64,000 nt of DNA. It comes from Rhodosorus marinus CCMP1338. Lineage: Eukaryota > Plantae > Rhodophyta. The stretch is taken from assembly GCA_029953675.1 (NCBI GenBank), contig JAMWBK010000013.1, positions 992,001 through 1,056,000 of the forward strand. The letters are read 5' to 3'. Made by a program: the position numbers and the translations under genes. Below the pieces are notes generated by a model that worked only from the letters and a program-made list of their open reading frames with translations, was not told where the DNA came from and did not search any database. This document shows positions 1 to 52,777 of the stretch, piece after piece. The first letter of the stretch is position 1; each line of letters opens with the position of its first letter.

Positions 1-372
1 ATCAGCAGAATACTGGTCATGAATACCGGGGAGTGTTGAGGGTCCCAGGAAAGGAACCTGGCTCTTCTCAAAGCCCTCAAGATCAAGCAGAACTGAGCGA
101 ACAGTTTAATCGGTTCCTAATTGTCAAAATGACCTTGACTAGTGTCTCCTCCGATAGGGAAATCGGCCTTAATAGACTAAAGACTGCTCATAATCGGTTC
201 CGCAGCTGCCGATAAACCTCCTGAGCAGATCGGTGGCGACTTTCGAAAGCCAGAAGTTCCTCGGCTTAGTTCCGGGGACTTTTGATTTCCGGAAGTACAG
301 CTAGCACACGTCTGGGTGGAGAGGTTGACCGCGGAATGTCTTCTAGAGAACTAAGAGTGAGTGTCTAGTCTG

Positions 373-23128: not shown

Positions 23129-23536
23129 CCGCCGTACCACATACGTTGATCTTGCTGTTCCTAACCCTCAAGCTAGTCGTTATCTCCCAGCTGCGGGGGA
23201 GCGCCGTGGATCTGCCGCCGCCAGCATGAGACGCCGCAAAGAGATCAAATACGCGGGGGCTTTGTCTTCCCCAGGTGTTCGTGCTTCGGCACTAGCACAT
23301 CGCTTGGTACCCCTGATCATTGAGTGCTTTGGGTTCATGGACTCTGTTGGTTCTCGCTGGCTTCGGGAGTTGTTCCGCGAACGCCCTGACCGTCTTCAAT
23401 CGTTGTTTACCCGCTTAAGTTTCCTGCTGTGGCGCATGAATGCCGCTTTGATGTTGGAGGCGCGAGTACTTCGCCGCGTTTAGTCTTTTTTTCCCCTCGG
23501 GGTTTTTTTTTCAGCCTCCGATTAAACCATTCGTTC
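23129..23536 (+). mobile_element. 5'-truncated copy (last ~410 bp) of the CRE-like non-LTR retrotransposon
   Basis: Matches 41727-42135; encodes YVDLAVPNPQASRY...KEIKY...ECFGFMDS and ends ATTAAACCATTCGTTC. Confidence 0.93.
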
Positions 23537-24830
23537 TAAGGACTTTGGGGTTGGGTGGGTTGGCCGTTGGGGGCTATCCGAGGATCCAACCTGCGGCTGT
23601 GGTCAGTTCGTGGGCAAACGCTTTGACTACGTGGGCCCAGGCGGTTGAAGTCTGTCCGCTGGGTTAAAGCGAGTTCTTCGTGAAGGGCGCCTATCCGAGG
23701 CTCTCTCCTCGCAGCTGAGTACCTTTTTGAGGAGCTGACGACAGTCATGCGGCAGTGTACGTTGCTTGGCAGCGGGATCCAACCGCAGTAGAGCTCCTGG
23801 GAGTGGGGTTTCACGTCCTTTGGGAGCCCGGCTATCTCAGGCTCTCCGGCTGCGGCGAATTTTGGACAAGGTCGAGATAGTTTCTGAGAAGAGCGTCCGT
23901 GTTGCTAAAATCGACACTACTGTCGACACTGCAGACTCCGCTGGCGGCCTGTGGACAAGGTCGAGATAGTTTCTGAGAAGAGCGTCCGTGTTGCTAAAAT
24001 CGACACTACTGTCGACACTGCAGACTCCGCTGGCGGCCTGTGGACAAGGTCGAGATAGTTTCTGAGAAGAGCGTCCGTGTCGCTAAAATCGACACTACTG
24101 TCGACACTGCAGACGACGAGGCTGTACCTGAGAGGCCGCCAGCGGAGTCTTCTTCGTCGGGACTCGCATGCCAGCGTCCGAGGTCGATCTTCCTCTTCGC
24201 CCGCTACCTTGGCCCGGTTCCAGAGTTTGGGCAGCAGTCTGAGCTCCAAGTTCTTCACGGTGATTCCTGCCTACCCTTGACTAGCCTTAACAGATTTTTC
24301 GATCTGCGTGTGATACTGCGTTCATATCTGGGTCTCCCCCAGCCGCTTGGCCTCTCGAGCGGAATGCCCCGTCTCTCCTCTCTGGTTGCATTGTGGAATC
24401 CCGCGCCTTTGGTGCCCGCCTGTTGGCGTCCTCTCCGGTGGTTCCAAGGCGCCGGTGTGCGTCGTCATACGCGTATAAACTGGTTTTTATTCGGATATCT
24501 ACGATTGCAGGTTCTTGGTACGGATCACGAGGTGGAGGTCCATTCGCCTGCAGCTCATTCGCTTGATGCTGATGATGAGATACCTGTTGTCCAGCGTGTG
24601 AAGGATTTGGTGGTCACTGAGCTGGCTTCTAGCAGGATTGAGTTTATTGACTTGCCCATTCCTTGTCTCCAGGATGCGCGATATCTTCCCACGTCGTCAC
24701 AACGTCGTGGTGCAGCCGCTGGTTCAATTCGACGACTGAAGGAGTCCCAGTACGCTAAGCGACGACTCATCCAACCTTTCGGGACTCGGCGTTGTCTCAT
24801 CGGCTTGCACCGTTGATCATCAAGTTTAGA
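23537..24830 (+). mobile_element. Older degenerate CRE-like ORF2 relic (thumb, zinc-knuckle region, RLE)
   Basis: LGLGGLAV..IQPAAVVSSW, DLRVILRSYLGLPQP, VRRHTRI and RVKDLVVT...FIDLPIP...RRGAAAGSIRRLKESQY align by eye with ORF2 of the young element. Confidence 0.8.
23863..24114. repeat. 89-bp tandem repeat, ~2.8 copies (also at 42462-42713)
   Basis: The unit starts tggacaaggtcgagatag at 23863, 23952 and 24041. Confidence 0.95.
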
Positions 24831-26054
24831 CAGTGTTGCTTCTCGCTGGCATAGTCGCGTTTTCCCTAGGTGACGTTCGTAGGAGCCTCCTCGTATCACA
24901 TCCTTGTGGCGGAGCATATGCGTGCAGCCGCATCCCACTCTCGAGTTGAAGAGGACAAACAACCCGAGGCAATTTGGGCAGCGACCGAGTCTACCAAGGC
25001 GTATGCGGAGTAGAAGCACTAGGTCACTTGAACTTCCGTTGGTGGAGATGAGTTGCCCGGGACGATTACCTTTCTGAATAAAGAAGCGTTGAAGGATGAG
25101 CATGGGGAGTTAATTAGCTCAGAGGACGGTACCGAAGCGATGCTTGCCTCGGATGAGATTGTGGAGTTCTCCCTGCAGACTGCAGAAGAAAATGCAGGGA
25201 CACAAGGATGGTCAGCAGAGCATTTCCGCAGCCACTCCAATCCCGACTTCTCCAGGAGGCCAAAGGCCTCTACGAGGAAAGCTGAAAATTTTTCATGGTG
25301 GATGCTCTCCGTGACTTTTTAAGTTTAGGGCTCCTTTCCGAGGTCCGGACAGAGGATCCAGCTCGACTCAACCATCAGGGCCTTGCCATTTGGGAAAGTT
25401 TCGGTTGTGCAGGTGTGAAGCAACAAGCTCTATCCAAAATCAACAGTTCCCTCCTTCAAATCACATATTTATACGGATCGCCAGAAGGTGTCAGCACAAC
25501 ACAACTGATCTGCGTATATCGTATGCTCCCCTGAAGCTGCACGTAAACTGTATCTCTGTTGAAAAGGGTCTCGTACAGGTCCTAATCTGAGACACCTAGT
25601 GGTCAACTGAAGGAAGAGGCTGGAAACCAATCAAGACCTACATGTTGACTGGACTTGGAAGGCGGGGGTTTCTGCGACGGTCGGGTCTAATGTTACCAAC
25701 ACAGGGCAACGTAGTCGCTACCAGTAATCCGTAGTTGTCAGCTAACGAAAAGACTGAGGATCCAGTTGGTGGGATGAGGGTTTTCGTCCGCTTGCGTCTG
25801 CATGAACCTTTTCCCGAAGTCAACAAATCTCGAAGACTGGAGCGCATAGATAGTGATCCTCGTGGGAATCAAGGACGAGCGAGAGGATGGGAAGGATCAT
25901 GAATACTCATCTACCTCGCCATTCCCAACAGACGCAATTTTCTAAATTCTGCTTCTGATGGAATCCGCAATCTGGTATCTGCTCCATCGCGGCCAGCCCC
26001 TGTCATTCTTTCGAGCGCGCGTTAGAACTTCAGACAAACAACAACCCCTTGATT

Positions 26055-37648: not shown

Positions 37649-38946
37649 ATGGTTGGGGTTTCCCCACCCATTCCGGCGGACGGAGCCGTTCTCTCAGCGC
37701 GCGTGGAGCTCAGCGTGGGCGGGTTTAGTACCGCGGCCACCCTCACGGACTGCGCTGACGAGTTAGCCCATGGGATCTGCTCGAAACTGACGAGTCTTCT
37801 TGTGACTGCTTCCCAGGAACACCGCCTGCCCCTGCTGATCGCCTATTTGGAGCGCTTCTCCGCCTCCGCGCCTGCCCCATACCCCCGGTGCCCGTCCCCG
37901 CGGATCCGCACGGTACAGCGGGGCCTGCCTCCACCCGACCCGAGCGCTCCGCTCCGGTCATTCCTGATTCCGACTGGCCTACCCCTATTCAAGGACAGAC
38001 GCCTCCTGGGCCCGCGTCGGGCCCGAATCCTGCTCCCTCCAGTGCCCCACGTGCGACCTATTCGCAGGTCCTACGCAGGGGCTCTTCTGAACAACGCACG
38101 ACGGCAATGGTGCGTATGATGCCACAACACATCCTTATTGACTCTTCTCGCCAACTATCTCCGTTCCACTTTGTTTGGATGACGAACGTGCGTCCCCAGA
38201 CCCCCTCTCGTGGTCGGGGCCGCGCGCCCGTCCACTACCGCGATTTTCGCGACACCATGGCTTCCTCCCTTGGGGTCGCCCCGTCTGAATTCCTATATGT
38301 GGACTTCACGGGCCCTCATGCCTGTTTTCTTGTTACTGACTCGGCTTACCAGTTCCTTCAATCGCTTGTAACCACCCCCGCGCCCCAGCGCTCTGCTCTG
38401 GCCAACATGATACTGACTCGTCCTCATGTCTCTTTGTTTGTCGAGTTCGATCGTTTTGACGCCGGCTGGGTTCCACCGTCGGCCTTGCAAAACCTGGATG
38501 CCTCGCAGGCTTCGGTTGTCGCGCTACACACTCATGCGGCGCGGCTCTCGCGCATACAGGCGAGCCTCTTCGCGCGTTTTCCTCCTCGCGGGGTCCTCCG
38601 CACCGCGCTAGAGGCCTTCCTCTCCACTGAGGCCACCCTGCTGGAAGCCCACCCTGCGTCTGACCTTCTGCCGCCGACTCCTGAGCACCCTTCCTCCCCT
38701 CGCCCTGTCTCCGAGGCTCGTGACACCGACATGGCAGAAGCACCATCGGCCTCTCCCAATCCGCTGGCTCTGGACACCCTCAGTCAAGACTCCGCTGCTG
38801 AAAACCCTGTGTCTACTTTCTTCAGGTCTTTTAGTTCCTTCGTGCGCCCTCCACGTAAGCGTCGTGCGGCTCCTGAGCCTCCCTCCGAGGCACCTCCTCC
38901 GGATATTCGATCTGCCTTCCCGACTGAGGGGAGGCCCGATGTCTGA
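37649..38946 (+). CDS. ORF1 of the CRE-like element (Pro-rich), with one -1 frameshift in a C5 run at 37882-37886
   Basis: ATG at 37649 in the 37535 frame joins the 37888-38946 frame if one C is added. The stop overlaps the ORF2 start (ATGTCTGA). Confidence 0.7.
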
Positions 38947-41900
38947 GTCTTCCTCCTCCGCGTGCGTGTCGTCCCGGTTACCCCTGTTTACCAGTGACCG
39001 CTCAGCCTGGCATGAGCGTGTTCTCTCGTGGTTTTCGCACCTTATCGCCTCCTACCCGGACGGTTCCCTTCCCCTTTGTCGTCAGAGCACGGCCGTACGG
39101 CTCCCTCGTCGACTTCATAAGCCCCTAGGATTGGTGTTGGATTTTCTCTGGCAGCAGGTCGCCGCGAACCCTCACTGCTCTCTTCGCTGGGAACTCTTGT
39201 TCTTTTTTCCCCGCCTCGTGCTCACATCCTCTACCGTCCCCCTCAACCCACATCCTCGCCGGGTCCACCCTCGCCGAAAACTGCAAATGTTCCTTTCCGG
39301 CGACTTTGAGGACCTCGAACGTCTTTATTTCGCTTCTCTCTCTTCCTTTTCTCCTAGTGCTTCCTCAGCTTTTAGGTCTTCTCGACAGAATCGGGCGCGT
39401 CACGCGGTGGCAGGCGGTGATCTGCGGCGGGCAGCCGGGATCCTCCAGCAGCGGCAACCTGTGGTTCCATACTCCGATGATCTTTCTTCACCGCTCCGTT
39501 TGCTCTTTCCCTCGGAAGGCTCCCCTTGGGACTCCTCGTTTGAATCAGTGTTGGAAGAGTACCGCGCCGCGCCACATCCCAGTGCGCGGTTAGTGGTCAA
39601 TCTGGAGGCGGTGCGTGAGTTGGTTCATGATGCTCCGAAGGGCCGTTCCCCAGGGCCCTCGGGGCTGCGGGTGGAATATCTCCGTTTCTTAAGTGATGAA
39701 GGTTTGAAGGCGTTGGCGTGGGTGGTCGAAGCGCTTGTGAATGGTGATCCCCTGTGTGAGTGTGCGTGGTTCTTGGTCGGGCGTTCGCAGTTGTGTCTGC
39801 TTTCGAAGCCCAGCCACACGGCCTCGAGCCCTGCTATTCGCCCTATTGGCCTGGTTGAGGTGGTCCGCAAATTGGCGGCGCGATGGTTAGTGAAAATCCT
39901 GGTTCGCGAATCCCGCCGTTTCTTTGGGCACGTGCAGTTAGGCGTGGGCTATCGTGGTGGCTGTGAGTTGTTGTCTGTTTTACTCCGTTCGGAAATGGCG
40001 TACTCCCCAGATTCTGGGCTCCTCTCTGTAGATTTTACCAATGCGTTCAACCGCGTCTCTCGTCCGGCTCTCATGCACGTGGTGCGCGAAGTCTTCCCTG
40101 TAGGCTTTCCCTTTGTTAGTAGACTTTATTCTCCGCTTGGTCGTGGGGCTACCTATGACACCCTTGGCGCTTCCTCACACACGTTTGCGGCGCGCACAGG
40201 GGTACAACAGGGTGATCCCTTGTCCCCTTTCCTACATGCCTGTGGACTACAACTCGTCTTGCTTTGTCTTCGCTCCGAATTCCCGCAGGTTCGTACGGTT
40301 GCATACCACGACGACGTGTGCCTCCTGGGGCCCCCTGATACTCTAGCACTCGCTTATGATCGTCTCCGCTCCTTGGCTTCGCGGGTTGACCTGGAGGTTA
40401 ATCATCACAAATCGTTCTACTGGGGAGGTGTAGCTGCACAAGAGCAGCAGGTACCTGCGTCGTTCCAGGATATTTGGAGACCGGATGGTTTTGTCCACTT
40501 AGGCATCCCCTACGGGTCGCCGTCCTTCGTTGAAGGCGAGTTGCTGCAGCTCCTCGGTAAGCACAGACAGCTGGTTGCAGAGCTTCGACGGCTACCTCCG
40601 GGCTTTCTCCAGTGCTCGTTGTTGCTGTTTCGGTATTGTTGCAGTCAGCGGTTAACCTATTGGCTTCGCTCACTTCCAACTCATTGGGGCCGGTGGTTGG
40701 CCACTCGTGCGGATGCTGAAAGTTTCCGTGACCTGGGGTATTTTCTCGATGAAGAGCTGAGCGCTCTGCCGCGACCCACCTGTGATGTTGTGCGCGCCCA
40801 GGTAGGCCTCCCATTGCGATTGGGGGACTGGGCCTCTGCAATCGTGTTGTGGTCCAACCTGCAGCCGCAGTAGGGGCCTGGGGAACCGCACTTCCCACTT
40901 TGAGCAGCTTGGGTATCTCGAAGTTCCGCAATTTGATGGCGAGCCTCTCGCGGGGTGTCTTGCTTCCCAGCGTACCGGAAAGCGCCCAAGACTTGTTTCT
41001 GGAGCTCCAAACCGCCCTGAATTCCTGTACTAGTCTCCCCGAAACCGTTCAACCCCGTCTTCCTGACTGGCGAGCTGTATTTGACCGCTCTCGAGGCTCC
41101 GCCCCGGGGATTCGTCCTGCGCCTGAACCTGTTCTAGGGGAGATTGACCCAGTGGTTGCCGCAGAAGAAGAAGTTCCAGTTGATCCTCCTGATGATTCCC
41201 AGCGCGCTGGGAGCCGAGCTCAAGCACGCACGGATGCGCTGCAAAATATCCTTTCTTGGGACTTGCACCGTGCTGCATATGGCCGACTCCTCGCGCAGAT
41301 GGTCTCATCTTCTCGCGCTCGCGCCCGCCTACGTAGTCTTGGAGGGGTTATTAGCTCTCAGTGGCTCATGACCGTACCAGCCTTTCCGCCACTCACACTG
41401 TCGGATTTCGAAGTGCGTACTTCACTGCGCTTATACCTCGGCTTACATCAGCCCCCTTGGCCGTACGAGATGGGTTCGTCGTGCCCTCTCTGCTCTCAGA
41501 CTGAAGACAACGCAGATTTTGGCGCCCACCTGCTCGCTAGTTGCCCGGCGGTGAAAGGTGCTCGAACCCGCCGCCACACACGGATCTTGAACCTGTTATA
41601 CCGGGAACTTCGACCTATAGTCCGGCAAGCCGGTCTGGAAATCGAACGTGAGAAACCTTTACCCGTCGCGGACTTTCAAAATGATGAACGCCGTGTAGCC
41701 GACCTGGTGATCACCTGTGACGACAGCCGCCGTACCACATACGTTGATCTTGCTGTTCCTAACCCTCAAGCTAGTCGTTATCTCCCGGCTGCGGGGGAGC
41801 GCCGTGGATCTGCCGCCGCCAGCATGAGACGCCGCAAAGAGATCAAATACGCGGGGGCTTTGTCTTCCCCAGGTGTTCGTGCTTCGGCACTAGCACATCG

Positions 41901-42081
41901 CTTGGTACCCCTGATCATTGAGTGCTTTGGGTTCATGGACTCTGTTGGTTCTCGCTGGCTTCGGGAGTTGTTCCGCGAACGCCCTGACCGTCTTCAATCG
42001 TTGTTTACCCGCTTAAGTTTCCTGCTGTGGCGCATGAATGCCGCTTTGATGTTGGAGGCGCGAGTACTTCGCCGCGCTTAG
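38939..42081 (+). CDS. ORF2 of the CRE-like element: reverse transcriptase + CCHC + restriction-like endonuclease, with one frameshift in a G5 run at 40822-40826
   Basis: Adding one G restores LPLRLGGLGLCNRVVVQPAAAVGAW and fuses the 717-aa and 410-aa ORFs. Confidence 0.88.
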
Positions 42082-42135
42082 TCTTTTTTTCCCCTCGGGG
42101 TTTTTTTTTTCAGCCTCCGATTAAACCATTCGTTC

Positions 42136-43430
42136 TAAGGACTTTGGGGTTGGGTGGGTTGGCCGTTGGGGGCTATCCGAGGATCCAACCTGCGGCTGTG
42201 GTCAGTTCGTGGGCAAACGCTTTGACTACGTGGGCCCAGGCGGTTGAAGTCTGTCCGCTGGGTTAAAGCGAGTTCTTCGTGAAGGGCGCCTATCCGAGGC
42301 TCTCTCCTCGCAGCTGAGTACCTTTTTGAGGAGCTGACGACAGTCATGCGGCAGTGTACGTTGCTTGGCAGCGGGATCCAACCGCAGTAGAGCTCCTGGG
42401 AGTGGGGTTTCACGTCCTTTGGGAGCCCGGCTATCTCAGGCTTACCGGCTGCGGCGAATTTTGGACAAGGTTGAGATAGTTTCTGAGAAGAGCGTCCGTG
42501 TTGCTAAAATCGACACTACTGTCGACACTGCAGACTCCGCTGGCGGCCTGTGGACAAGGTCGAGATAGTTTCTGAGAAGAGCGTCCGTGTTGCTAAAATC
42601 GACACTACTGTCGACACTGCAGACTCCGCTGGCGGCCTGTGGACAAGGTCGAGATAGTTTCTGAGAAGAGCGTCCGTGTCGCTAAAATCGACACTACTGT
42701 CGACACTGCAGACGACGAGGCTGTACCTGAGAGGCCGCCAGCGGAGTCCTCTTCGTCGGGACTCGCATGCCAGCGTCCGAGGTCGATCTTCCTCTTCGCC
42801 CGCTACCTTGGCCCGGTTCCAGAGTTTGGGCAGCAGTCTGAGCTCCAAGTTCTTCACGGTGATTCCTGCCTACCCTTGACTAGCCTTAACAGATTTTTCG
42901 ATCTGCGTGTGATACTGCGTTCATATCTGGGTCTCCCCCAGCCGCTTGGCCTCTCGAGCGGAATGCCCCGTCTCTCCTCCTTGGTTGCATTGTGGAATCC
43001 CGCGCCTTTGGTGCCCGCCTGTTGGCGTCCTCTCCGGTGGTTCCAAGGCGCCGGTGTGCGTCGTCATACGCGTATAAACTGGTTTTTATTCGGATATCTA
43101 CGGTTGCAGGTTCTTGGTACGGATCACGAGGTGGAGGTCCATTCGCCTGCAGCTCATTCGCTTGATGCTGATGATGAGATACCTGTTGTCCAGCGTGTGA
43201 AGGATTTGGTGGTCACTGAGCTGGCTTCTAGCAGGATTGAGTTTATTGACTTGCCCATTCCTTGTCTCCAGGATGCGCGATATCTTCCCACGTCGTCACA
43301 ACGTCGTGGTGCAGCCGCTGGTTCAATTCGACGACTGAAGGAGTCCCAGTACGCTAAGCGACGACTCATCCAACCTTTCGGGACTCGGCGTTGTCTCATC
43401 GGCTTGCACCGTTGATCATCAAGTTTAGAC
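42136..43430 (+). mobile_element. Duplicate of the older CRE-like relic (with the 89-bp repeats)
   Basis: Near-identical to 23537-24830; the 258-aa ORF translation is the same. Confidence 0.8.
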
Positions 43431-44652
43431 AGTGTTGCTTCTCGCTGGCATAGTCGCGTTTTCCCTAGGTGACGTTCGTAGGAGCCTCCTCGTATCACAT
43501 CCTTGTGGCGGAGCATATGCGTGCAGCCGCATCCCACTCTCGAGTTGAAGAGGACAAACAACCCGAGGCAATTTGGGCAGCGACCGAGTCTACCAAGGCG
43601 TATGCGGAGTAGAAGCACTAGGTCACTTGAACTTCCGTTGGTGGAGATGAGTTGCCCGGGACGATTACCTTTCTGAATAAAGAAGCGTTGAAGGATGAGC
43701 ATGGGGAGTTAATTAGCTCAGAGGACGGTACCGAAGCGATGCTTGCCTCGGATGAGATTGTGGAGTTCTCCCTGCAGACTGCAGAAGAAAATGCAGGGAC
43801 ACAAGGATGGTCAGCAGAGCATTTCCGCAGCCACTCCAATCCCGACTTCTCCAGGAGGCCAAAGGCCTCTACGAGGAAAGCTGAAAATTTTTCATGGTGG
43901 ATGCTCTCCGTGACTTTTTAAGTTTAGGGCTCCTTTCCGAGGTCCGGACAGAGGATCCAGCTCGACTCAACCATCAGGGCCTTGCCATTTGGGAAAGTTT
44001 CGGTTGTGCAGGTGTGAAGCAACAAGCTCTATCCAAAATCAACAGTTCCCTCCTTCAAATCACATATTTATACGGATCGCCAGAAGGTGTCAGCACAACA
44101 CAACTGATCTGCGTATATCGTATGCTCCCTGAAGCTGCACGTAAACTGTATCTCTGTTGAAAAGGGTCTCGTACAGGTCCTAATCTGAGACACCTAGTGG
44201 TCAACTGAAGGAAGAGGCTGGAAACCAATCAAGACCTACATGTTGACTGGACTTGGAAGGCGGGGGTTTCTGCGACGGTCGGGTCTAATGTTACCAACAC
44301 AGGGCAACGTAGTCGCTACCAGTAGTCCGTAGTTGTCAGCTAACGAAAAGACTGAGGATCCAGTTGGTGGGATGAGGGTTTTCGTCCGCTTGCGTCTGCA
44401 TGAACCTTTTCCCGAAGTCAACAAATCTCGAAGACTGGAGCGCATAGATAGTGATCCTCGTGGGAATCAAGGACGAGCGAGAGGATGGGAAGGATCATGA
44501 ATACTCATCTACCTCGCCATTCCCAACAGACGCAATTTTCTAAATTCTGCTTCTGATGGAATCCGCAATCTGGTATCTGCTCCATCGCGGCCAGCCCCTG
44601 TCATTCTTTCGAGCGCGCGTTAGAACTTCAGACAAACAACAACCCCTTGATT

Positions 44653-47600
44653 TCACATCACGACGCAACAGCCTTCTTTGGGCCGGAGTCTATATGGGAG
44701 AGTGTCCGATCCACCGCCTGCTCCAATGGAGCTAGCTCCTATACGATTTTCGAGCATCAGTCTAGTGCTGCTGTCCGCTACTGTTGCCAACCACTTGGCT
44801 ATATCTTCTTTCGACATATACTTTTTCCCATGTTCTGCCAACTTGAACAGCGTCTCAACCTCTGTCTGGTACTGCGCGCACAATGCAAGGACGCTCCGAC
44901 CCCTCTTGTCGACGTGTGACAGCCACTTGGCCGTATCTTCTTTCGGTACATACTTTTCCCCATACTCCAGCAACGCTATCAACGGCTCTCCCTTCTCCTG
45001 GTATTCCGCACACATATGAAGGACGCTCTCACCGTTGTTGTTGACGTGCGACAACCACTTGAACATCTCTTCTTTGGGTAAATACTTTCCCCCCGACTCC
45101 AGCAACGCTATCAACGCGTCTCCTTTCTCCTGGTGTCGCGCACAGAGATGAAAGACGCTCCAACCGTCGTTGTTGACGTGTGACAACCAATTGGCCATCT
45201 CTTCTTTGGACATATACTTTCCCCCATACTCCAGCAACGCTATCAACGCGTCTCCCTTCTCCTGGTATTCCGCACACATATGAAGGACGCTCGAACTGTC
45301 GCTGCTGACGTGTGACAACCAATTGGCCATCTCTTCTTGGGGTAAATACTTTCCCCCATACTCCAGCAACGCTATCAACGCGTCTCCCTTCTCCTGGTAT
45401 CGCGCACATAGATGAAGAACGCTCCAACCGCCTTTGTCGACGTGTGACAACCAATTGGCCATCTCTTCTTTGGATATATACTTTCCCCCATACTGCAGCA
45501 ACGCTATCAACGCGTCTCCCTTCTCCTGGTATTCCGCACACATATGAAGGACGCTCGAACTGTCGCTGCTGACGTGTGACAACCAATTGGCCATCTCTTC
45601 TTGGGGTAAATACTTTCCCCCATACTCCAGCAACGCTATCAACGCGTCTCCCTTCTCCTGGTATCGCGCACATAGATGAAGAACGCTCCAACCGCCTTTG
45701 TGGACGTGTGACAACCAATTGGCCATCTCTTCTTTGGACATATACTTTCCCCCATACTCCAGCAACGCTATCAACGCGTCTCCCTTCTCCTGGTATCGCG
45801 CACATGGATGAAGAACGCTCCAACCGCCGTTATTGACGTGTGACAACCACTTGGCCATCTCTTCTTGGGGTAAATACTCTCCCCCATACTCCAGCAACGC
45901 TATCAACGCGTCTCCCTTCTCCTGGTTTAGCGCACATAGATGAAGAACGCTCCAACCGCCTTTGTCGACGTGTGACAACCAATTGGCCATCTCTTCTTTG
46001 GACATATATTTTCCCCCATACTCCAGCAACGCTATCAACGCGTCTCCCTTCTCCTGGTATCGCGCACATGGATGAAGAACGCTCCAACCGCCGTTATTGA
46101 CGTGTGACAACCACTTGGCCATCTCTTCTTGGGGTAAATACTCTCCCCCATACTCCAGCAACGCTATCAACGCGTCTCCCTTCTCCTGGTTTAGCGCACA
46201 TAGATGAAGAACGCTCCAACCGTCGTTGTTGACGTGTGACAACCAATTGGCCATCTCTTCTTTGGACATATACTTTCCCCCATACTCCAGCAACGCTATC
46301 AACGCGTCTCCCTTCTCCTGGTATTCCGCACACATATGAAGGACGCTCGAACTGTCGCTGTTGACGTGTGACAACCAATTGGCCATCTCTTCTTGGGGTA
46401 AATACTTTCCCCCATACTCCAGCAACGCTATCAACGCGTCTCCCTTCTCCTGGTATCGCGCACATAGATGAAGAACGCTCCAACCGCCTTTGTCGACGTG
46501 TGACAACCAATTGGCCATCTCTTCTTTGGATATATACTTTCCCCCATACTCCAGCAACGCTATCAACGCGTCTCCCTTCTCCTGGTATCGCGCACATAGA
46601 TGAAGAACGCTCCAACCGCCTTTGTCGACGTGTGACAACCAATTGGCCATCTCTTCTTTGGACATATACTTTCCCCCATACTCCAGCAACGCTATCAACG
46701 CGTCTCCCTTCTCCTGGTATCGCGCACATAGATGAAGAACGCTCCAACCGCCTTTGTCGACGTGTGACAACCAATTGGCCATCTCTTCTTTGGACATATA
46801 CTTCCCCCCATACTCCAGCAACGCTATCAACGCGTCTCCCTTTTCCTGGTATCGCGCACATGGATGAAGAACGCTCCAACCGCCGTTGTTGACGTGTGAC
46901 AACCACTTGGCCATCTCTTCTTGGGGTAAATACTCTCCCCCATACTCCAGCAACGCTATCAACGCGTCTCCCTTCTCCTGGTTTAGCGCACATAGATGAA
47001 GAACGCTCCAACCGTCGTTGTCGACGTGTGACGACAACCACTTGGCCATCTCTTCTTTGGACATATACTTTCCCCCATACTCCAGCAACGCTATCAACGC
47101 GTCTCCCTTCTCCTGGTTTTGCGCACATAGATGAAGAACGCTCCAACCGTCGTTGTCGACGTGTGACAACCACTTGGCCATCTCTTCTTTGGACATATAC
47201 TTTCCCCCATACTCCAGCAACGCTATCAACGCGTCTCCCTTCTCCTGGTATTCCGCACACATATGAAGGACGCTCGAACTGTCGCTGCTGACGTGTGACA
47301 ACCAATTGGCCATCTCTTCTTGGGGTAAATACTTTCCCCCATACTCCAGCAACGCTATCAACGCGTCTCCCTTCTCCTGGTATCGCGCACATAGATGAAG
47401 AACGCTCCAACCGCCTTTGTGGACGTGTGACAACCAATTGGCCATCTCTTCTTTGGACATATACTTTCCCCCATACTCCAGCAACGCTATCAACGCGTCT
47501 CCCTTCTCCTGGTATCGCGCACATGGATGAAGAACGCTCCAACCGCCGTTATTGACGTGTGACAACCACTTGGCCATCTCTTCTTGGGGTAAATACTCTC

Positions 47601-50600
47601 CCCCATACTCCAGCAACGCTATCAACGCGTCTCCCTTCTCCTGGTTTAGCGCACATAGATGAAGAACGCTCGAACCGTAGTAGTCGACGCGTGACAACCA
47701 CTGGGCCATCTCTTCTTGGGGTAAATACTTTCCCCCATACTCCAGCAACGCTATCAACGCGTCTCCCTTCTCCTGGTATTCCGCACATGGATGAAGGACG
47801 CTCGAACCGTAGTAGTCGACGCGTGACAACCAATTGGCCATCTCTTCTTTGGACATATACTTTCCCCCATACTCCAGCAACGCTATCAACGCGTCTCCCT
47901 TCTCCTGGTATCGCGCACATAGATGAAGAACGCTCCAACCGCCTTTGTCGACGTGTGACAACCAATTGGCCATCTCTTCTTTGGACATATACTTTCCCCC
48001 ATACTGCAGCAACGCTATCAACGCGTCTCCCTTTTCCTGGTATCGCGCACATGGATGAAGAACGCTCCAACCGCCGTTGTTGACGTGTGACAACCACTTG
48101 GCCATCTCTTCTTGGGGTAAATACTCTCCCCCATACTCCAGCAACGCTATCAACGCGTCTCCCTTCTCCTGGTTTTGCGCACATAGATGAAGAACGCTCT
48201 CACCGTCGTTGTCGACGTGTGACAACCACTTGCCCATCTCTTCTTTGGACATATACTTTCCCCCATACTCCAGCAACGCTATCAACGCGTCTCCCTTCTC
48301 CTGGTATTCCGCACACATATGAAGGACGCTCGAACTGTCGCTGTTGACGTGTGACAACCAATTGGCCATCTCTTCTTGGGGTAAATACTTTCCCCCATAC
48401 TCCAGCAACGCTATCAACGCGTCTCCCTTCTCCTGGTATAGCGCACATAGATGAAGAACGCTCCAACCGACTTTGTGGAGGACGTGTGACAACCAATTGG
48501 CCATCTCTTCTTTGGACATATACTTTCCCCCATACTCCAGCAACGCTATCAACGCGTCTCCCTTCTCCTGGTATCGCGCACATGGATGAAGAACGCTCCA
48601 ACCGCCGTTGTTGACGTGTGACAACCACTTGGCCATCTCTTCTTGGGGTAAATACTCTCCCCCATACTCCAGCAACGCTATCAACGCGTCTCCCTTCTCC
48701 TGGTATCGCGCACATAGATGAAGAACGCTCCAACCGCCTTTGTCGACGTGTGACAACCACTTGGCCATCTCTTCTTGGGGTAAATACTCTCCCCCATACT
48801 CCAGCAACGCTATCAACGCGTCTCCCTTCTCCTGGTTTTGCGCACATAGATGAAGAACGCTCCAACCGTCGTTGTCGACGTGTGACAACCACTTGGCCAT
48901 CTCTTCTTTGGACATATACTTTCCCCCATACTCCAGCAACGCTATCAACGCGTCTCCCTTCTCCTGGTATTCCGCGCACATATGAAGGACGCTCCAACCG
49001 TCGTTGTTGACGTGCGACAACCACTTGGCTATGTCCTCTCCGAGTAAATACTTTCCCCCCGACTCCAGCAAAATTGTCAACTCTTCCCTCACCCCAGTGC
49101 ACTTACGCAGGTACTCCCCTGCCAACTCCAGGTCCCAATTCGCCCCTTCTATAGACTGCCCTAAAGCAACAAAACGAGATTCGTCTAGATCCTCGCGACC
49201 CTTTCCGGATTTCGGCGACAATCTACCAGTCTTGCCTGCGTTCGCGGGCTGTTCTGGCCCGATCGTGCTGGCTACAGCTCCCTCCTGAGGAGTCTGACCG
49301 ATACCTCTTCCATTTCTAGATTTATTCTCGGATGATTTGTCATCCTCTTCATCGCTCATCACTGTCGACAATCTATCTTCAACTTCCCCCGGCGATTCGG
49401 GTGCTTCCCGCCCTGGATCAAGTCCCCACAGAGTCTCTTCCAGTCGAACCACAATTGTTCCAAACTCTGGCCGTTCCCCTGGTGCTTTGGAAAGACATTC
49501 ACAAGTCAATGTCTTCACCTCCTCGGGGCAATCGTCTTTCATTGCCGACGACGGAAAGTCATAAGTGCCGTTTTCCAACTGACGAAATATTGACCTCAAC
49601 TGCAGTCCCTTGTATGGAACCTCGCCAGAGAACAGCTCCCACATGAGAACCCCAAAGCTGAAAACGTCCGTCTTCCTGTTGAAAGTCGGTTGGTCCTCGG
49701 GGACGCATTCCGGAGCCATGTATTGATAGGTCCCGCCGTTGGCCCCAGCATGCGTAACCGCCGTGCCCTGAATGACTGCCGTCTCCTGCACGATTTTGGC
49801 TACCCCAAAATCAGCGATTTTCACCGCTCTTTCGTCTCCAGGTACCAGCACGTTCCCAGGTTTCAAGTCCCTGTGTATGACATGCATTTGATGCATGTAG
49901 CTCATTCCCACCGCAATCTGCCTCGCCACGTCAGCCTTGCGCGCCGTTCCCTCGATAAACCTGCCAGGGTTACACAACGTATACAAGCATGGAGAAAACA
50001 AAGTCGAGCATGAGTATCTGAAAGTCCAAGCATGGCCGTCCGTGCCAACCTTCAATCCGCTCGTATACCGCAGTGGTAGACCATGACCTCGTCCGTTTAA
50101 GAGACAAGACTGAACACGACTGCTTACCTTTGGTGCTTCTTGTCATGTATAGCCCTCGAGAGATCACAACCATCGACAAGCTCCATGACCAAAAAGGGAC
50201 AACGACTTTCCTCCTGGAGCGGAAAATAAGCTCCGATTGGAAACACGATGTTCGGATGTCTTAAGCGGTGCATGATCTCAACTTCTACACAAAACGTTCT
50301 GTACTCGGCTTCTGCTCCACTAAATAAGTCGATCTCCTTCACTGCAACAAGAGTGCTCTTCCTGTACGTGCCCTTCACTACCCGACCTTGTGCACCTAGT
50401 CGAATTAAGTCTCCTAGCGCCACATCCTCAAATCGCAAATACCAGAATGGCTTTTTCCCCGGCTTTTCCCGCCCCTGCGAGTGCCGTAGTTCGTGTAGAA
50501 TCGTTCCTAACATCTCTTTTACATCTCCTGTCTCATCCACGATACGTTCCACCGCCTCTCCGACAGATGTTTGAAGTTTTTGAATTTCGCTCCGTAGTTC

Positions 50601-50993
50601 GGCAAAGTCCTCACAAAGCGCGTCCTCCAGTCCGTAGGAAAGATCCAGGGCGATGTCAAGCTGGAGATCTCGTATGCACTGGTCAAGCTGATCCATGCAA
50701 CACTTGAACATCTTTACAAATTTGTCCGCAGACACAAGCCTGCTGAGGTACTGCTTTTTGCACCGCCACCCGTCTACCTGAGTGTTCAGAGATTCTAGAG
50801 CACGGTTCAACCGTTCCAAACTGAGCTTGTCAAGGTTTTGATGCTTGGCCAACGACTCCCGGATGGCTTCCACTCTGCCCCTGGCCCATTTTGCTGTGGC
50901 TTTGTTGCATTGCACCTGGTCGATCCTTTCCAGCGTAGTTTCAATGAGGCGCACGGCTATGCCCATGCCCTCACCCGCTGCCAAGTCGGCCAT
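44653..50993 (-). CDS. Paralogue: MLKL-like 4HB + TKL kinase + 32 x 44-aa ankyrin-like repeats + CaaX (CCVVM); exons 50993-50128 and 49960-44653; 2057 aa
   Basis: Same splice sites and motifs as 26055-30676; the frame stays open across the whole array. Confidence 0.88.
44794..49023 (-). repeat. Coding tandem array: 32 units of 132 bp, two with 3-bp insertions
   Basis: 4230 bp = 32x132+6; units counted in the translation. Confidence 0.97.
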
Positions 50994-51516
50994 ATTGCGT
51001 CTCCCAGCACAGAAGTTTTCTCACCTCAGCTCCACAGGCAAGAGGAACATGACCGCGAATGATGTGTCACGCAATAGAAAGGTTGAAACCACCAGTTCGC
51101 TTCACCCAACTCTTCAACGACCTCTTCAACAGCCCACTGCTCCAACCCCAACTTGCCACAACCTCACCTCCCTCCTCCGCCCCTCCCCCACCCAACAGCT
51201 GCAGAATCACCCCTCCCTCAATCCCCCCTCTTTAAAAACTAGACTACAATCAACCTCCCTCCATTACCAGAAGACCTTCCGCAAATCGAAACTAGCTCGT
51301 CCTCCCTACCCATCAATGACAAACACACAACATGCCCCGAGATTTCTTGCCCAGACCCCATCTCATCCCCCCCCCCTCCGGATGGTCAATAACGTGATGT
51401 TTAGAGCAGAAATATATCGGCAGGAAAAGGGCCCTCTATAATTACATTTATGGTCAGTACTTCCGAGCACCTTTTTGGGAGACGCACACTGGCTCCGGCT
51501 ATAGCTAAGACCCCAT

Positions 51517-51635
51517 AGTTTCCTGCTGTGGCGCATGAATGCCGCTTTGATGTTGGAGGCGCGAGTACTTCGCCGCGCTTAGTCTTTTTTTCCCCTCGGG
51601 GTTTTTTTTTCAGCCTCCGATTAAACCATTCGTTC
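51517..51635 (+). mobile_element. CRE-like 3'-end stub (duplicate of 31197-31315)
   Basis: Same sequence and same flanks as 31197-31315. Confidence 0.9.
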
Positions 51636-52382
51636 GATTGCCTCACCGTAGCGACTTTGCTCCATGTGGAAAACAGTCTCCAGTTGAACAGCATTACCCG
51701 AATACCGGTAGTACTGGAAACGAACTCAGTTTCGAGGTTTTGCTCGTACGTGCTTTTCGAAATTCGAGAAGGGCGACGCTGTAAGGCCTGGCTAACTGTG
51801 GAGTTCCACCCAATCATGTCCTGCGAGGTGATGAGGGTTTACGACCCGAAGGCGGTCGCGACTCAAAAATAGCGCCCAGAAGTATTGACCATACGCGTAT
51901 CCGCATAGTGCCAGCCAGCACTGGCATTTTCTCAGCAATTGTAGAATAAATTTCTGTTGTAGAGCTAGCAAGTTCATGGTTTGCTCTAGATTTATTGGGA
52001 AGTTAACAACGCCGAGTTGGGTTTCCTACGAGAGGGAAAGGAGAGCGCTAGCAGTCACAAGTCTGTGGAGCAACTTGTGACTGCTAGCCACTCAATGAGC
52101 AAGAACTACCCCGTGCTGACTGGCACTCGCACGCCCACTAAGTGTTTGGTCTGTTTAGATCGTGGACGAGTTGTAACCTAAGGTCCCAAACTAGCTCAAA
52201 TGTAGTAGTGATTAGGGAGATCACGTAAAAACGAAAGGGATCCTTGTTGGAGCATCTGAGCCAGAACCTACCAGGGACGTTGGCCGGAAAGCACCTCATG
52301 TGGGAAATTTCTCAACAGTGTTTTTGCCGTGAAAAAACGGTAATGTCGATACTAAATCGGTAATTGCGTTAAAAATCAGCTC

Positions 52383-52777
52383 TGCGCCAACATATCTGTA
52401 GGGGAATCGTGCGCCACCATATGTGCAGAGGAATCGTGCGCCACCATATGTGTAGAGGAATCGTGCACCAACCTATCTGGAGGGAAATCGTGCACCAACC
52501 TATCTGGAGGGGAATCGTGCACCGACGTATCTGTAGGGGAATCGTGCACCAACATATCTGTAGGGGAATTGTGCACCAACATATCTGTAGAGGAATCGTG
52601 CACCAACATATCTGTAGGGGAATCGTGCACCAACATATCTGTATGAATCATACGCCAACTTCTCTGTAGAGAATCATGCGCCAACTTCTCTGTAGGGAAT
52701 CATACGCCAGCTTTTCTGAAGGGAATCATGCGCCAGCTTTTCTGAAGGGAATCATGCGCCAACACTTCTGTAGGGAA
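52383..52777. repeat. Minisatellite (27/26-bp units), shorter copy, truncated at the duplication breakpoint
   Basis: Same units as 32063-32580, fewer copies, ending at ...ttctgtagggaa|gagggcg. Confidence 0.93.

What the first reader, a model, noticed from the sequence alone, without database searches (positions are those of the whole stretch)
44653..50993. Two very young paralogues with completely reshuffled arrays (19 vs 32 repeats)
Seen: outside the array I found only three amino-acid differences (F/L in the 4HB; V/A and H/Q in the kinase) and one silent change. The first two and last three repeats are shared, but the interior differs in number and order. Recurring higher-order blocks (NNGGW-P-RY > HKGGW-L-RY > SSDSS-M-EY) appear in both copies. 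Turn, helix and linker modules recombine in new combinations, and all indels are multiples of 3, so the frame is preserved over 4.2 kb. Inference: array remodelling by unequal crossing-over or gene conversion runs far faster than point mutation, as in fungal het-e/NWD loci, and could generate new specificities.
Basis: partly seen in the sequence, partly recalled or inferred. Interest (0 to 1): 0.82.

Follow-up and report, generated by a model that had tools for sequence, protein, structure and literature searches.

The report
Fast-evolving ankyrin-repeat kinase gene pair
Two almost identical neighbouring genes of the red alga Rhodosorus marinus encode a kinase with a long tail of near-identical 44-residue ankyrin-type repeats, and the tails (19 and 32 repeats) have diverged by gain, loss and exchange of repeats much faster than by point mutation, as happens in fungal self/non-self receptors.

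Summary
The sequence facts are correct. Copy A (26055-30676) and copy B (44653-50993), both on the minus strand, lie in a 9.4/11 kb segmental duplication. Outside the arrays they differ by 4 nucleotides in the coding sequence (3 amino acids) and by about 0.2% in 7 kb of flank. The arrays hold 19 and 32 in-frame units of 132 bp.

"Completely reshuffled" is overstated. Three block indels (3, 3 and 13 units) align 16 of A's 19 units colinearly, better than all 1000 order shuffles. Of the 27 differences left in paired units, 22 swap variants already present in other units. Private mutations occur at the flank rate. So remodelling outruns point mutation.

Variation sits at unit positions 1-5, 10, 13 and 14, the ankyrin binding face (pN/pS 4.2, against 0.35 in framework codons).

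The window is Rhodosorus marinus. The family has four members, one of them decayed. The public annotation truncates all four before the array.

The protein has an orphan all-helical N-terminus (MLKL-like only at non-significant level), a motif-intact TKL kinase, the array and a CaaX box. There is no NOD domain.

A recognition or immune role is inferred, not shown. The Nanopore/Pilon assembly needs checking against raw reads.

The parts
44653..49960 (-). Copy B, exon 2: second half of the kinase, acidic/Ser-rich linker, capping half-repeat, 32-unit array, 41-aa tail ending in CCVVM, stop codon
   Evidence: The ORF and the GT-AG splice were read directly. The joined CDS is 6174 nt and has one terminal stop.
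50128..50993 (-). Copy B, exon 1: all-helical N-terminal domain (aa 1-~190) and first half of the kinase domain
   Evidence: This is NDN08_000273 (P0121), which carries L86, A298 and Q409.
49961..50127 (-). Copy B, 167-nt GT-AG intron inside the kinase domain
   Evidence: It is identical to the intron of copy A.
44779..49008 (-). Copy B array: 32 units of 132 bp (two of 135 bp), aa 607-2016
26055..29643 (-). Copy A, exon 2 (as in B, but with a 19-unit array)
   Evidence: This is NDN08_000271 (P0001), which carries F86, V298 and H409.
29811..30676 (-). Copy A, exon 1
   Evidence: It has one nucleotide difference from B exon 1.
26181..28691 (-). Copy A array: 19 units (one of 135 bp), aa 607-1443
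23129..32570 (.). Segmental duplication, copy A segment. The low boundary is sharp, at a point that corresponds to the inside of a non-LTR retroelement ORF. The high boundary lies in a 27-bp minisatellite.
   Evidence: Self-BLAST and boundary reading
41727..52777 (.). Segmental duplication, copy B segment
   Evidence: Flank identity is 99.6% on the low side and 99.1% on the high side, minisatellite included.
44653..44670 (-). C-terminal CaaX box (…EGCCVVM*). The same motif is at 26055-26072 in copy A and in both paralogues on the other contig.
   Evidence: Translations. No hydrophobic segment is long enough for a transmembrane helix.
52383..52775 (.). 27-bp minisatellite about 1.4 kb upstream of copy B (14.8 copies). 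Its counterpart upstream of copy A is at 32063-32579 (19.5 copies).

Best explanation
SHOWN
- The window is from the nuclear genome of the red alga Rhodosorus marinus. A recent segmental duplication of about 9.4/11 kb produced two tandem paralogues of a four-member gene family.
- Each gene encodes five parts in order: an orphan all-alpha N-terminal domain of about 190 aa; a TKL/RAF-like Ser/Thr kinase with intact catalytic motifs; a disordered acidic linker; 19 or 32 near-identical 44-aa ankyrin-type units; and a C-terminal CaaX box.
- The model of the array gives each unit three helices and a beta-turn finger.
- The array behaves as a 132-bp coding minisatellite. Since the duplication (about 0.2% flank divergence) the two arrays have come to differ by at least three unit-block indels (3, 3 and 13 units). 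They also differ by many exchanges of pre-existing variants between units. New point mutations have accumulated only at the flank rate.
- The unit length is 44 codons, so all such events keep the reading frame.
- Variation among units is overwhelmingly non-synonymous. It is concentrated at positions 1-5 (finger tip) and 10, 13, 14 (first helix), the canonical ankyrin ligand-binding face. The 30 framework codons are under purifying selection.

INFERRED
- Mechanism: out-of-register pairing of units that are 92% identical. This gives unequal sister-chromatid or paralogue exchange, or replication slippage, plus short-tract gene conversion within arrays, between arrays, and possibly with the paralogue on the other contig.
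- Function (about 0.3 probability on its own): the array is a diversifiable recognition surface held at the cytosolic face of a membrane by farnesylation. Ligand binding would be passed on through the kinase and/or the helical N-terminal domain. That would make it a NOD-less analogue of fungal receptors with highly conserved repeats.
For: - Organism and family. P0001 and P0121 are NDN08_000271 and NDN08_000273. Two further paralogues are on JAMWBK010000007.1.
- Gene models and differences outside the array.
- Duplication extent and flank divergence.
- Units and their identity matrices.
- Colinear alignment and shuffle test.
- Exchange-type versus private differences.
- Four-gamete test.
- Variability profile and pN/pS (1.79 overall; 4.2 at positions 1-5, 10, 13, 14; 0.35 in framework codons; at the a-priori DARPin positions 2, 3, 5, 13, 14, pN 0.30 and pS 0).
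- Pfam gives PK_Tyr_Ser-Thr at 4.7e-52 and Ank_2 at 5.8e-24.
- The nearest solved kinases are RAF. VAVK, HRDLK, DFG and APE are all present.
- The AF2 model of the array has pLDDT 91.2. Its Foldseek matches are all ankyrin proteins, E about 5e-6.
- CaaX box present and no transmembrane segment.
- Copy C shares units with B that A lacks (C6 = B11; C11-12 = B28-29, 0 differences). So at least part of B's extra block is ancestral and was lost from A.
Against: - The assembly comes from Nanopore reads polished three times with 100-bp Illumina reads. Multi-mapped short reads can transplant variants between units, so some of the 22 exchange-type differences could be artefacts.
- Unit numbers have not been verified on spanning reads.
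- pN/pS among repeats of one gene is not a formal test. Part of the site set was chosen after seeing the data, and recombination inflates such tests.
- Unit types follow a quasi-regular order (DNDGW > NNGGW > D/HKGGW > SSDSS). That could reflect an old, structurally required higher-order repeat and not ongoing diversification.
- Only paralogues were compared. There are no population or allele data.
- I examined no transcript evidence for the array, and the public gene models stop before it.
- The N-terminal domain has no detectable homologue. Its model has low confidence (pLDDT 52), so any effector role is conjecture.
Confidence: 0.65

Rival explanations
1. Assembly or polishing artefact. The two arrays, or the fine differences between them, were produced by mis-assembly of a tandem repeat from noisy Nanopore reads and by Pilon polishing with multi-mapped 100-bp reads. 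On this view they are not biological.
For: The methods are ONT GridION, NextDenovo and three rounds of Pilon with 100-bp paired reads. The fungal literature shows that arrays of this type cannot be reconstructed from short-read assemblies (PMC12222747). Most differences between paired units are swaps of variants that exist elsewhere, which is what mis-polishing would also produce.
Against: - The arrays are 2.5 and 4.2 kb, shorter than the 6-kb size-selected reads, so single reads should span them.
- Three independent arrays stay in frame over 2-4.2 kb, and the flanks carry their own private substitutions and different boundaries.
- Long-read data reconstructed the comparable fungal arrays correctly.
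- Block indels of 3, 3 and 13 units cannot come from polishing.
- A collapse or expansion would also be in frame, so the open frame does not protect the unit counts.
Confidence: 0.12
2. Neutral minisatellite drift in a structural ankyrin scaffold or tether. Unit types would be old and kept in a quasi-regular higher-order pattern for packing, or for binding a periodic partner. Copy number and order would wander without consequence for specificity, as in long ankyrin 'springs' and adaptors.
For: - Unit types recur in a preferred order, and several module combinations are fixed. NNGGW always goes with P-RY-KMSK, in 9 of 9 units.
- A non-coding 27-bp minisatellite in the same duplicated segment also changed copy number.
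- The fourth paralogue has decayed.
- Long ankyrin solenoids such as NOMPC and AnkB are among the structural matches.
Against: - Non-synonymous differences exceed synonymous ones across the whole unit (pN/pS 1.79). They pile up on the finger tip and first helix, while the framework codons are constrained (pN/pS 0.35).
- All five a-priori binding positions are among the 11 most variable of 44 (P = 4e-4).
- Neutral drift does not predict that pattern.
Confidence: 0.2
3. The public gene models are right. The genes encode only a ~550-aa N-terminal-domain-plus-kinase protein, and the repeat array is untranslated 3' sequence or a relic.
For: All four annotated proteins (540-571 aa) end just before the array. 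For A and B this is through a 70-nt GT-AG 'intron' that shifts the frame to a stop at 49105-49103. The only annotated protein cluster that covered the N-terminal domain and kinase stops before the array, and my protein searches found no full-length product.
Against: - The four models end in three different ways at homologous places. That is typical of a predictor escaping a masked repeat.
- The direct reading frame runs without a stop from the kinase through 19, 32 and 15 units into a conserved tail with a CaaX box, in three paralogues.
- All indels are multiples of 3, and the framework codons show pN/pS 0.35.
- The units match Pfam ankyrin models and fold with pLDDT 91.
- A related transcript-like contig (L003/P0124) reads from N-terminal-domain-like sequence and linker into such repeats.
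Confidence: 0.05
4. The paralogues are old, and gene conversion keeps only the non-array parts identical. On this view the arrays diverged slowly and the 'young duplicate' clock is misleading.
For: Conversion clearly operates in this family. Divergence is lowest next to the array (0.06-0.16%) and somewhat higher in the distal flanks (about 0.3%).
Against: Near-identity extends evenly over non-coding flanks, including fragments of transposable elements, up to a sharp breakpoint inside a retroelement ORF. That is the signature of a recent duplication of the whole segment. Unit-private mutations inside the arrays are as rare as the flank differences.
Confidence: 0.08

Closest known systems
Fungal NLRs with highly internally conserved repeats (Podospora het-e/het-d/NWD family; ANK, TPR or WD arrays; Dyrka et al. 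2014, PMC4986451; PMC12222747)
   Same: - C-terminal solenoid array of near-identical units.
- Repeat-number differences and unit exchange within and between family members.
- Hypervariable positions on the ligand-binding face, with dN > dS.
- Cytosolic protein with an N-terminal helical domain in front.
   Different: - No NACHT or NB-ARC domain; an apparently active TKL kinase sits in the central position.
- The unit is a 44-aa three-helix ankyrin variant, not the 33-34 aa unit.
- There is a C-terminal CaaX box.
- The host is a unicellular red alga.
- Internal amino-acid identity is 83%, just under the 85% used to define the fungal class.
MLKL-type proteins: animal and plant MLKL, and the wheat Pm13 'MLKL-K' protein (4HB - brace - kinase; PMC11297308)
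   Same: - Helical N-terminal domain of about 120 aa, then a long helix, then a kinase domain; no signal peptide.
- The MLKL executioner domain gives the top structural matches of the N-terminal model.
- As in Pm13, the kinase keeps its catalytic motifs.
   Different: - No sequence similarity, and no Pfam match to a four-helix-bundle or MLKL-type domain.
- The structural match is not significant (E 0.28) and rests on a low-confidence model.
- MLKL proteins have no repeat array and no CaaX box.
Kinase-plus-ankyrin proteins of the TKL group (RIPK4/ANKK1: kinase followed by ankyrin repeats; ILK: ankyrin repeats followed by kinase). Named from my own knowledge.
   Same: A TKL-type kinase joined to an ankyrin array in one polypeptide.
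   Different: Those arrays are short (about 4-11 units), their units are divergent, and they are evolutionarily stable. No hypervariability or copy-number dynamics are known for them.
Coding minisatellites under diversifying selection, e.g. the PRDM9 zinc-finger array. Named from my own knowledge.
   Same: Tandem coding units whose ligand-contact residues are hypervariable while the framework is homogenised. Evolution is by unequal exchange and conversion, always in frame.
   Different: A different fold, a different ligand (DNA) and a different biological role.
Brown-algal LRR-ROCO and NB-ARC-TPR candidate immune receptors (PMC11378527)
   Same: Algal multigene families whose repeat sensor domains are shuffled and under diversifying selection.
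   Different: There each repeat is a separate exon, and diversity comes from exon shuffling and alternative splicing. Here the whole array lies in one exon and changes by unequal recombination. The signalling domains are also different.

Membership tests
NLR/STAND receptors with highly conserved repeats (het-e/NWD type) | Central NOD domain (NACHT or NB-ARC) | tested here: not met
   Pfam scan of aa 1-1002 finds only kinase and ankyrin families. No NACHT or NB-ARC domain is found.
NLR/STAND receptors with highly conserved repeats (het-e/NWD type) | C-terminal ANK, TPR or WD repeats with high internal conservation (>85% identity over >=100 aa in Dyrka et al.) | tested here: inconclusive
   Mean pairwise identity of interior units is 92.5% at nucleotide level and 83% at amino-acid level over 660-1270 aa. 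This is very high, but marginally under the 85% amino-acid cut-off.
NLR/STAND receptors with highly conserved repeats (het-e/NWD type) | Repeat-number polymorphism and unit exchange between alleles or paralogues | tested here: met
   The four paralogues have 19, 32, 15 and about 30 units. Identical units occur at different positions and in different genes. Alleles from other strains were not available.
NLR/STAND receptors with highly conserved repeats (het-e/NWD type) | Positively selected hypervariable sites on the binding surface | tested here: met
   pN/pS is 4.2 at positions 1-5, 10, 13 and 14, against 0.35 in the framework. At the a-priori positions 2, 3, 5, 13 and 14, pN is 0.30 and pS is 0. 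The positions map to the beta-turn and helix 1 of the model. This is a rough test and is not recombination-aware.
Ankyrin repeat proteins | Sequence match to ankyrin profiles and an ankyrin solenoid fold | tested here: met
   Ank_2 matches at 5.8e-24, and Ank_3, Ank_4 and Ank also match. The AF2 model has pLDDT 91.2, and its Foldseek hits are exclusively ankyrin proteins.
Ankyrin repeat proteins | Canonical unit of 33 aa with two helices | tested here: not met
   The unit is 44 aa. A third short helix (positions 34-41) is inserted in the loop. The only other proteins found with this unit are from Rhodosorus marinus or of unidentified source (a JGI contig).
MLKL-like (4HB - brace - kinase) | N-terminal four-helix-bundle executioner domain (MLKL_NTD / HeLo-like) | tested here: inconclusive
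   - No four-helix-bundle or MLKL-type family appears in Pfam even at E <= 10.
- No homologue exists among 1.84 billion representative proteins.
- The single-sequence AF2 model is all helical (H3-26, 31-50, 56-74, 89-117, 123-174) but has pLDDT 52.
- The top five Foldseek hits are MLKL executioner domains, with E 0.28-0.8 and TM 0.43-0.59, which is not significant.
MLKL-like (4HB - brace - kinase) | Kinase or pseudokinase domain directly after the helical region | tested here: met
   PK_Tyr_Ser-Thr covers aa 196-462. VAVK, HRDLKPGN, DFG and APE are present. The glycine loop is atypical (LGAQGRV).
Active TKL-group protein kinases | Catalytic Lys, HRD Asp, DFG and APE; nearest relatives are TKL kinases | tested here: met
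   Motifs. The best solved relatives are B-RAF and RAF1, E about 1e-35. Catalytic activity itself cannot be tested here.
CaaX-prenylated proteins | C-terminal Cys-aliphatic-aliphatic-X as the last four residues | tested here: met
   All four paralogues end in CCVVM followed by the stop codon. That CVVM is a farnesylation signal, as in N-Ras, is established knowledge. The modification itself was not tested.

The most novel reading that the evidence does not exclude
A unicellular red alga carries a self-contained innate-immunity or self/non-self receptor that has no NOD domain. A farnesyl-anchored, hypervariable 44-aa ankyrin array senses a foreign or altered-self ligand. A TKL kinase acts as the switch. 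An MLKL-like helical N-terminal domain executes membrane damage or cell death. On this reading the family evolved the 'highly conserved repeat with hypervariable sites' strategy of fungal NLRs by convergence, and it joins both halves of a necroptosis-like RIPK/MLKL module in one polypeptide.
Probability: 0.2. Interest if true: 0.85.

Novelty: new variant of a known kind. Interest (0 to 1): 0.62.

Why it matters
Arrays of near-identical repeats with hypervariable contact residues are a known way to generate recognition diversity quickly. They have been described mainly in fungal (and some bacterial) NLRs.

Here the same dynamics appear in a red alga. They are attached to a kinase and a prenylation signal in place of a NOD domain, and they use a repeat subtype that my searches found only in Rhodosorus marinus and in one unidentified contig. 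This suggests the strategy is more widespread and more modular than thought. It also gives a candidate for the almost unknown immune or recognition systems of red algae.

There is a practical lesson too. The public annotation cuts all four genes short and hides the arrays. Families of this kind are therefore likely to be missed systematically in proteome-based surveys.

Tried and rejected
1. Retroelement 3' transduction as the origin of the duplication. The low boundary lies inside the ORF of a non-LTR element that is upstream on the same strand. But I saw no poly-A tract and no obvious target-site duplication at the other boundary, which ends in a minisatellite. Not supported.
2. Old paralogues with conversion limited to coding sequence. 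Rejected, because the non-coding, TE-derived flanks are equally identical.
3. Homologues of the N-terminal domain. Pfam at E <= 10 gave only noise; the best hit was PUB10_N at E 0.026, below its threshold. An exhaustive phmmer search of 1.84 billion representatives found only the family itself. PDB sequence searches hit only the kinase.
4. Structure of the N-terminal domain. The single-sequence AF2 model has low confidence, and the four paralogues are too similar to help. The Foldseek result is therefore only a hint.
5. Affine unit alignment with cheap gap extension collapses to the trivial 'replace the whole interior' solution and says nothing. Intermediate costs gave between 3 and 6 gap blocks, so the exact history is not unique.
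6. Relatives of the array, searched with one sequence and with a profile. Only two proteins were found.
7. Pfam on ORF fragments of the neighbouring gene at 52.9-56.3 kb gave nothing. I call it a P-type ATPase from the DKTGTLT and GDGTND motifs alone.
8. I looked for a citable list of the DARPin randomised positions in the paper library and did not find one. Positions 2, 3, 5, 13, 14 and 33 are from my own knowledge (Binz et al. 2003).
Full report
WHAT IS THERE

The window is eukaryotic DNA with spliced genes, retroelements and about 50% GC. A protein search with the non-repeat part of the gene returned, at 98-100% identity, two 'hypothetical proteins' of the red alga Rhodosorus marinus: NDN08_000271 and NDN08_000273, both on one 1.1-Mb contig of GCA_029953675.1. 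P0001 carries the residues of copy A and P0121 those of copy B.

The finding's coordinates hold copy B on the minus strand: exon 1 50993-50128, a 167-nt GT-AG intron, exon 2 49960-44653, 2057 aa. Copy A lies at 30676-26055 with the same structure and 1484 aa.

Both genes sit in a segmental duplication, 23129-~32570 against 41727-~52777. The low boundary is sharp and lies inside the ORF of a non-LTR retroelement. The high boundary lies in a 27-bp minisatellite. A copia-like element and the full retroelement lie between the copies.

CHECK OF THE OBSERVATION

Outside the arrays the two coding sequences differ at 4 nucleotides: F86L, V298A, one silent change, and H409Q. The intron is identical, and so are the last 537 nt.

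Tandem Repeats Finder reports a period of 132 with 18.8 and 31.8 copies. Splitting the proteins gives 19 and 32 units of 44 aa. A has one 45-aa unit and B has two, so every indel is a multiple of three. Units 1-2 and the last three units are identical at the nucleotide level. The block NNGGW-P-RY > HKGGW-L-RY > SSDSS-M-EY is present at A7-9, B12-14 and B25-27.

The title's 'completely reshuffled' does not hold.
- Eleven of A's 19 units have a twin in B with zero differences.
- With moderate gap costs the arrays align colinearly with only three gap blocks: A1-2 = B1-2; A3-5 extra; A6-12 ~ B3-9; B10-12 extra; A13-16 ~ B13-16; B17-29 extra; A17-19 = B30-32.
- Other cost settings give up to six blocks, so the exact history is not unique.
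- The colinear cost (73) beats all 1000 shuffles of B's interior order (mean 84.6, minimum 75).
- A rare 3-nt insertion (WLSSHV) marks unit 15 of both arrays and is followed by an identical unit 16.
- One 13-unit block therefore accounts for the whole difference in length.
- The paralogue on the other contig (copy C) has units identical to B28-29 directly before the shared terminal three, and a unit identical to B11. At least part of what B has and A lacks is therefore ancestral and was lost from A.

RATES

The unique flanks of the duplicated segment differ by about 15 substitutions in about 7 kb (0.2%), plus three small indels. The 2.5 kb before the array differs at 4 sites, and the 1.7 kb from the third-last unit onwards at 1 site.

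In the 16 paired units (2112 nt) there are 27 substitutions, where 4.5 would be expected at the flank rate (Poisson P = 6e-13). Of these 27, 22 exchange alleles that both occur in at least two other units. Only 5 involve a private allele.

Over all 45 interior units there are 9 private variants in 5940 nt (0.15%), which is the flank rate.

Of the 276 pairs of informative sites, 102 show all four gametes. Almost none of these pairs lie within a module, and many lie between turn, helix and linker modules.

So ordinary point mutation is not elevated. What is fast is the gain and loss of unit blocks and the exchange of existing variants between units. The non-coding 27-bp minisatellite upstream also changed (19.5 against 14.8 copies). 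An 89-bp repeat did not.

THE FAMILY

The cluster of the annotated protein has four members. The other two lie 20 kb apart on contig JAMWBK010000007.1.
- Copy C (NDN08_004488, locus L001) is intact, has 15 units, and differs from A and B by 1.2-1.5% outside the array.
- Copy D (NDN08_004490, locus L002) is 6.7% divergent. It has about 30 more degenerate units with a 264-bp higher-order period. Its reading frame is broken at least twice. It looks like a decaying copy, unless these breaks are uncorrected sequencing errors.

All four annotated proteins stop at 540-571 aa, just before the array, and they do so in three different ways. For A and B the model uses a 70-nt frame-shifting 'intron' (49226-49157 in B) that runs into a stop. 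I take this to be a gene-predictor artefact at a repeat, for these reasons:
- The direct frame stays open through the array into a conserved tail in three paralogues.
- The framework codons are under purifying selection.
- The units match ankyrin profiles.
- The units fold with high confidence.

THE PROTEIN

- aa 1-~190 has no Pfam match. It has no homologue among 1.84 billion representative proteins other than the family itself. The single-sequence model is all helical (3-26, 31-50, 56-74, 89-117 and a long helix 123-174) but of low confidence, pLDDT 52. Its best PDB matches are MLKL executioner domains, with E 0.28-0.8 and TM 0.43-0.59.
- aa 196-462 is a protein kinase (4.7e-52). It is closest to RAF among solved structures. 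It has VAVK, HRDLKPGN, DFG and APE, and an unusual glycine loop.
- An acidic, serine-rich linker follows, and then a capping half-unit and the array.
- A model of the cap plus six units has pLDDT 91.2 and pTM 0.87. Each 44-aa unit has helix 1 (positions 7-14), helix 2 (19-31), an extra short helix 3 (34-41) and a beta-turn formed by position 44 and positions 1-6 of the next unit. The structural neighbours are all ankyrin proteins: DARPins, gankyrin, AnkB (E about 5e-6).
- Searches with a single sequence and with a profile found this 44-aa unit in only two other proteins. One is an R. marinus transcriptome protein. The other is a 1.7-kb contig about 81-83% identical at the nucleotide level.
- The protein ends in CCVVM followed by the stop codon in all four paralogues. 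This is a CaaX box of the N-Ras type with a neighbouring cysteine. There is no hydrophobic segment. A cytosolic protein tethered to a membrane by its C-terminus is therefore predicted.

WHERE THE VARIATION SITS

Among 42 interior units of A and B, the variable positions are 1-5, 10, 13, 14, 26, 30, 32-34 and 39. The other positions are essentially invariant.

Of the 33 variable nucleotide sites, only about six are synonymous.

pN/pS among distinct units:
- whole unit: 1.79
- positions 1-5, 10, 13, 14: 4.2
- positions 26, 30, 32-34, 39: 2.1
- remaining 30 codons: 0.35

Unit positions 1-14 are in register with the ankyrin consensus (G4, [T/S]6, L8, H9, A12; Pfam alignment). To my knowledge, the five positions randomised in designed ankyrin binders are 2, 3, 5, 13 and 14. 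All five are among the 11 most variable of 44 (P = 4e-4). At those positions pN is 0.30 and pS is 0.

Dyrka et al. found the same location, the inner helix and the beta-hairpin on the concave face, for positively selected sites in fungal NLR ankyrin repeats (PMC4986451).

These are rough tests. Units of one gene are not independent, recombination is rife, and part of the site set was chosen after looking at the data.

HOW IT MOST LIKELY WORKS

Shown: the array is a coding minisatellite whose unit is exactly 44 codons, with 92.5% nucleotide identity between units. Its differences are block indels and allele exchanges.

Inferred:
- Units mispair out of register. This gives unequal exchange or slippage (block gain and loss) and short conversion tracts (module swaps), within an array and between paralogues.
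- The frame is always kept, so every product is a new, foldable solenoid with a different string of contact residues.
- The hypervariable face is a ligand-binding surface. The kinase and/or the helical N-terminus transmit binding. The farnesyl tail places the whole protein on a membrane.

The functional reading as a recognition or immune receptor is a hypothesis, at roughly 0.3.

COMPARISON WITH KNOWN SYSTEMS

It works like the fungal het-e/het-d/NWD and other receptors with highly conserved repeats. It is not a member of that family, because it has no NOD domain.

The first two-thirds resemble MLKL-type proteins, above all the wheat Pm13 'MLKL-K' protein, which has a four-helix bundle, a brace and an active kinase. 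Membership is unproven, because the N-terminal domain shows no sequence similarity to them.

TKL kinases with ankyrin arrays (RIPK4/ANKK1) and coding minisatellites such as the PRDM9 zinc-finger array are further partial analogues; both are named from my own knowledge. Brown-algal ROCO and NB-ARC-TPR families diversify their repeats by exon shuffling, which is a different mechanism.

My literature searches found no description of this family or of conserved-repeat sensors in red algae. This is an absence in a limited library, not proof of absence.

CAVEATS

The assembly is ONT (6-kb size selection) with NextDenovo and three rounds of Pilon with 100-bp reads. Long reads can recover such arrays where short reads cannot. 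But short-read polishing inside a repeat can transplant variants between units. Unit counts have not been verified on spanning reads. Only paralogues of one strain were compared. I examined no transcript evidence for the arrays.

VERDICT

This is a real and well-described feature, a young gene pair with fast-evolving ankyrin arrays. The architecture is a new variant of a known kind of system. Function remains to be shown.

Noticed in passing
window 44653-44670 and 26055-26072 (minus strand); L001 about 14050-14073; L002 about 16020-16043: All four paralogues end in ...RPKEGCCVVM followed by the stop codon. This is a CaaX box of the N-Ras type (CVVM) with an adjacent cysteine. It predicts farnesylation, possibly with palmitoylation, and so a C-terminal membrane anchor behind the repeat array. 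No transmembrane segment is present.
   Followed up: partly
window 49103-49226 (copy B) and the equivalent place in copy A; proteins P0001, P0121, P0122, P0123: The public annotation truncates all four family members to 540-571 aa, just before the array, and does so in three different ways. In A and B it uses a 70-nt frame-shifting 'intron'. The arrays are therefore absent from the public proteome, and protein-based surveys would miss them.
   Followed up: partly
L002 10001-16043 (NDN08_004490, contig JAMWBK010000007.1): The fourth paralogue is 6.7% divergent. Its array has about 30 units, is more degenerate, and has a 264-bp (two-unit) higher-order period. Its frame is broken at least twice, and the kinase motif reads DLG where the others have DFG. 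It is probably a decaying copy, unless these are uncorrected Nanopore errors.
   Followed up: partly
window 32063-32579 and 52383-52775; L001 3447-3885: A 27-bp minisatellite lies upstream of three paralogues, with 19.5, 14.8 and 16.5 copies. It forms the upper end of the A/B duplication. A mechanical ORF through it (52376-52684, minus strand) reads as a 9-aa repeat, but it is probably non-coding.
   Followed up: no
window 37888-42081 (+); fragment at 23129-~23900: A non-LTR retroelement with an RVT_1 ORF (38720-40873) and a following ORF (40849-42081). The A/B duplication breakpoint falls inside that second ORF, so copy A carries only the element's 3' end. A second, degenerate ORF related to the element's C-terminus follows in both copies (24040-24816 and 42639-43415).
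   Followed up: partly
window ~32839-37201; L001 1-3370; L002 19058-21888: A copia-like element (gag-pre-integrase, integrase core; ORF 34561-35523) lies upstream of copy A. It is 99% identical to elements beside both paralogues on the other contig, although the genes there are only about 94% identical over the aligned gene region, array included (98.5% outside the array). Either the element is recently active or the loci have a mosaic history.
   Followed up: no
window 23863-24114 and 42462-42713; 32656-33022: An 89-bp tandem repeat (2.8 copies) lies in the duplicated downstream flank and is unchanged between the copies. A perfect 183-bp x 2 repeat lies next to the copia-like element.
   Followed up: no
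L003 (JGI sample 3300016967, contig Ga0186194_103271, 1707 nt), protein P0124: A contig about 81-83% identical at the nucleotide level encodes duplicated pieces of the N-terminal domain, the linker and at least 4.5 repeats of 44 aa. It has no kinase domain, and its units are much less alike. It may be a transcript of a relative lacking the kinase, or a mis-assembly.
   Followed up: partly
window 13812-19505 (-), 361-1176 (+), 52938-56283 (-): Neighbouring genes. There is a GCN1/EF3-type HEAT-repeat protein (1897-aa ORF) and a class I SAM methyltransferase. There is also a multi-exon P-type ATPase, recognised only from its DKTGTLT and GDGTND motifs; Pfam found nothing on the fragments.
   Followed up: partly
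copy A and copy B, aa 198-206: The kinase glycine-rich loop reads LGAQGRVVKG, one residue short of the usual GxGxxGxV. All other catalytic motifs are canonical.
   Followed up: no
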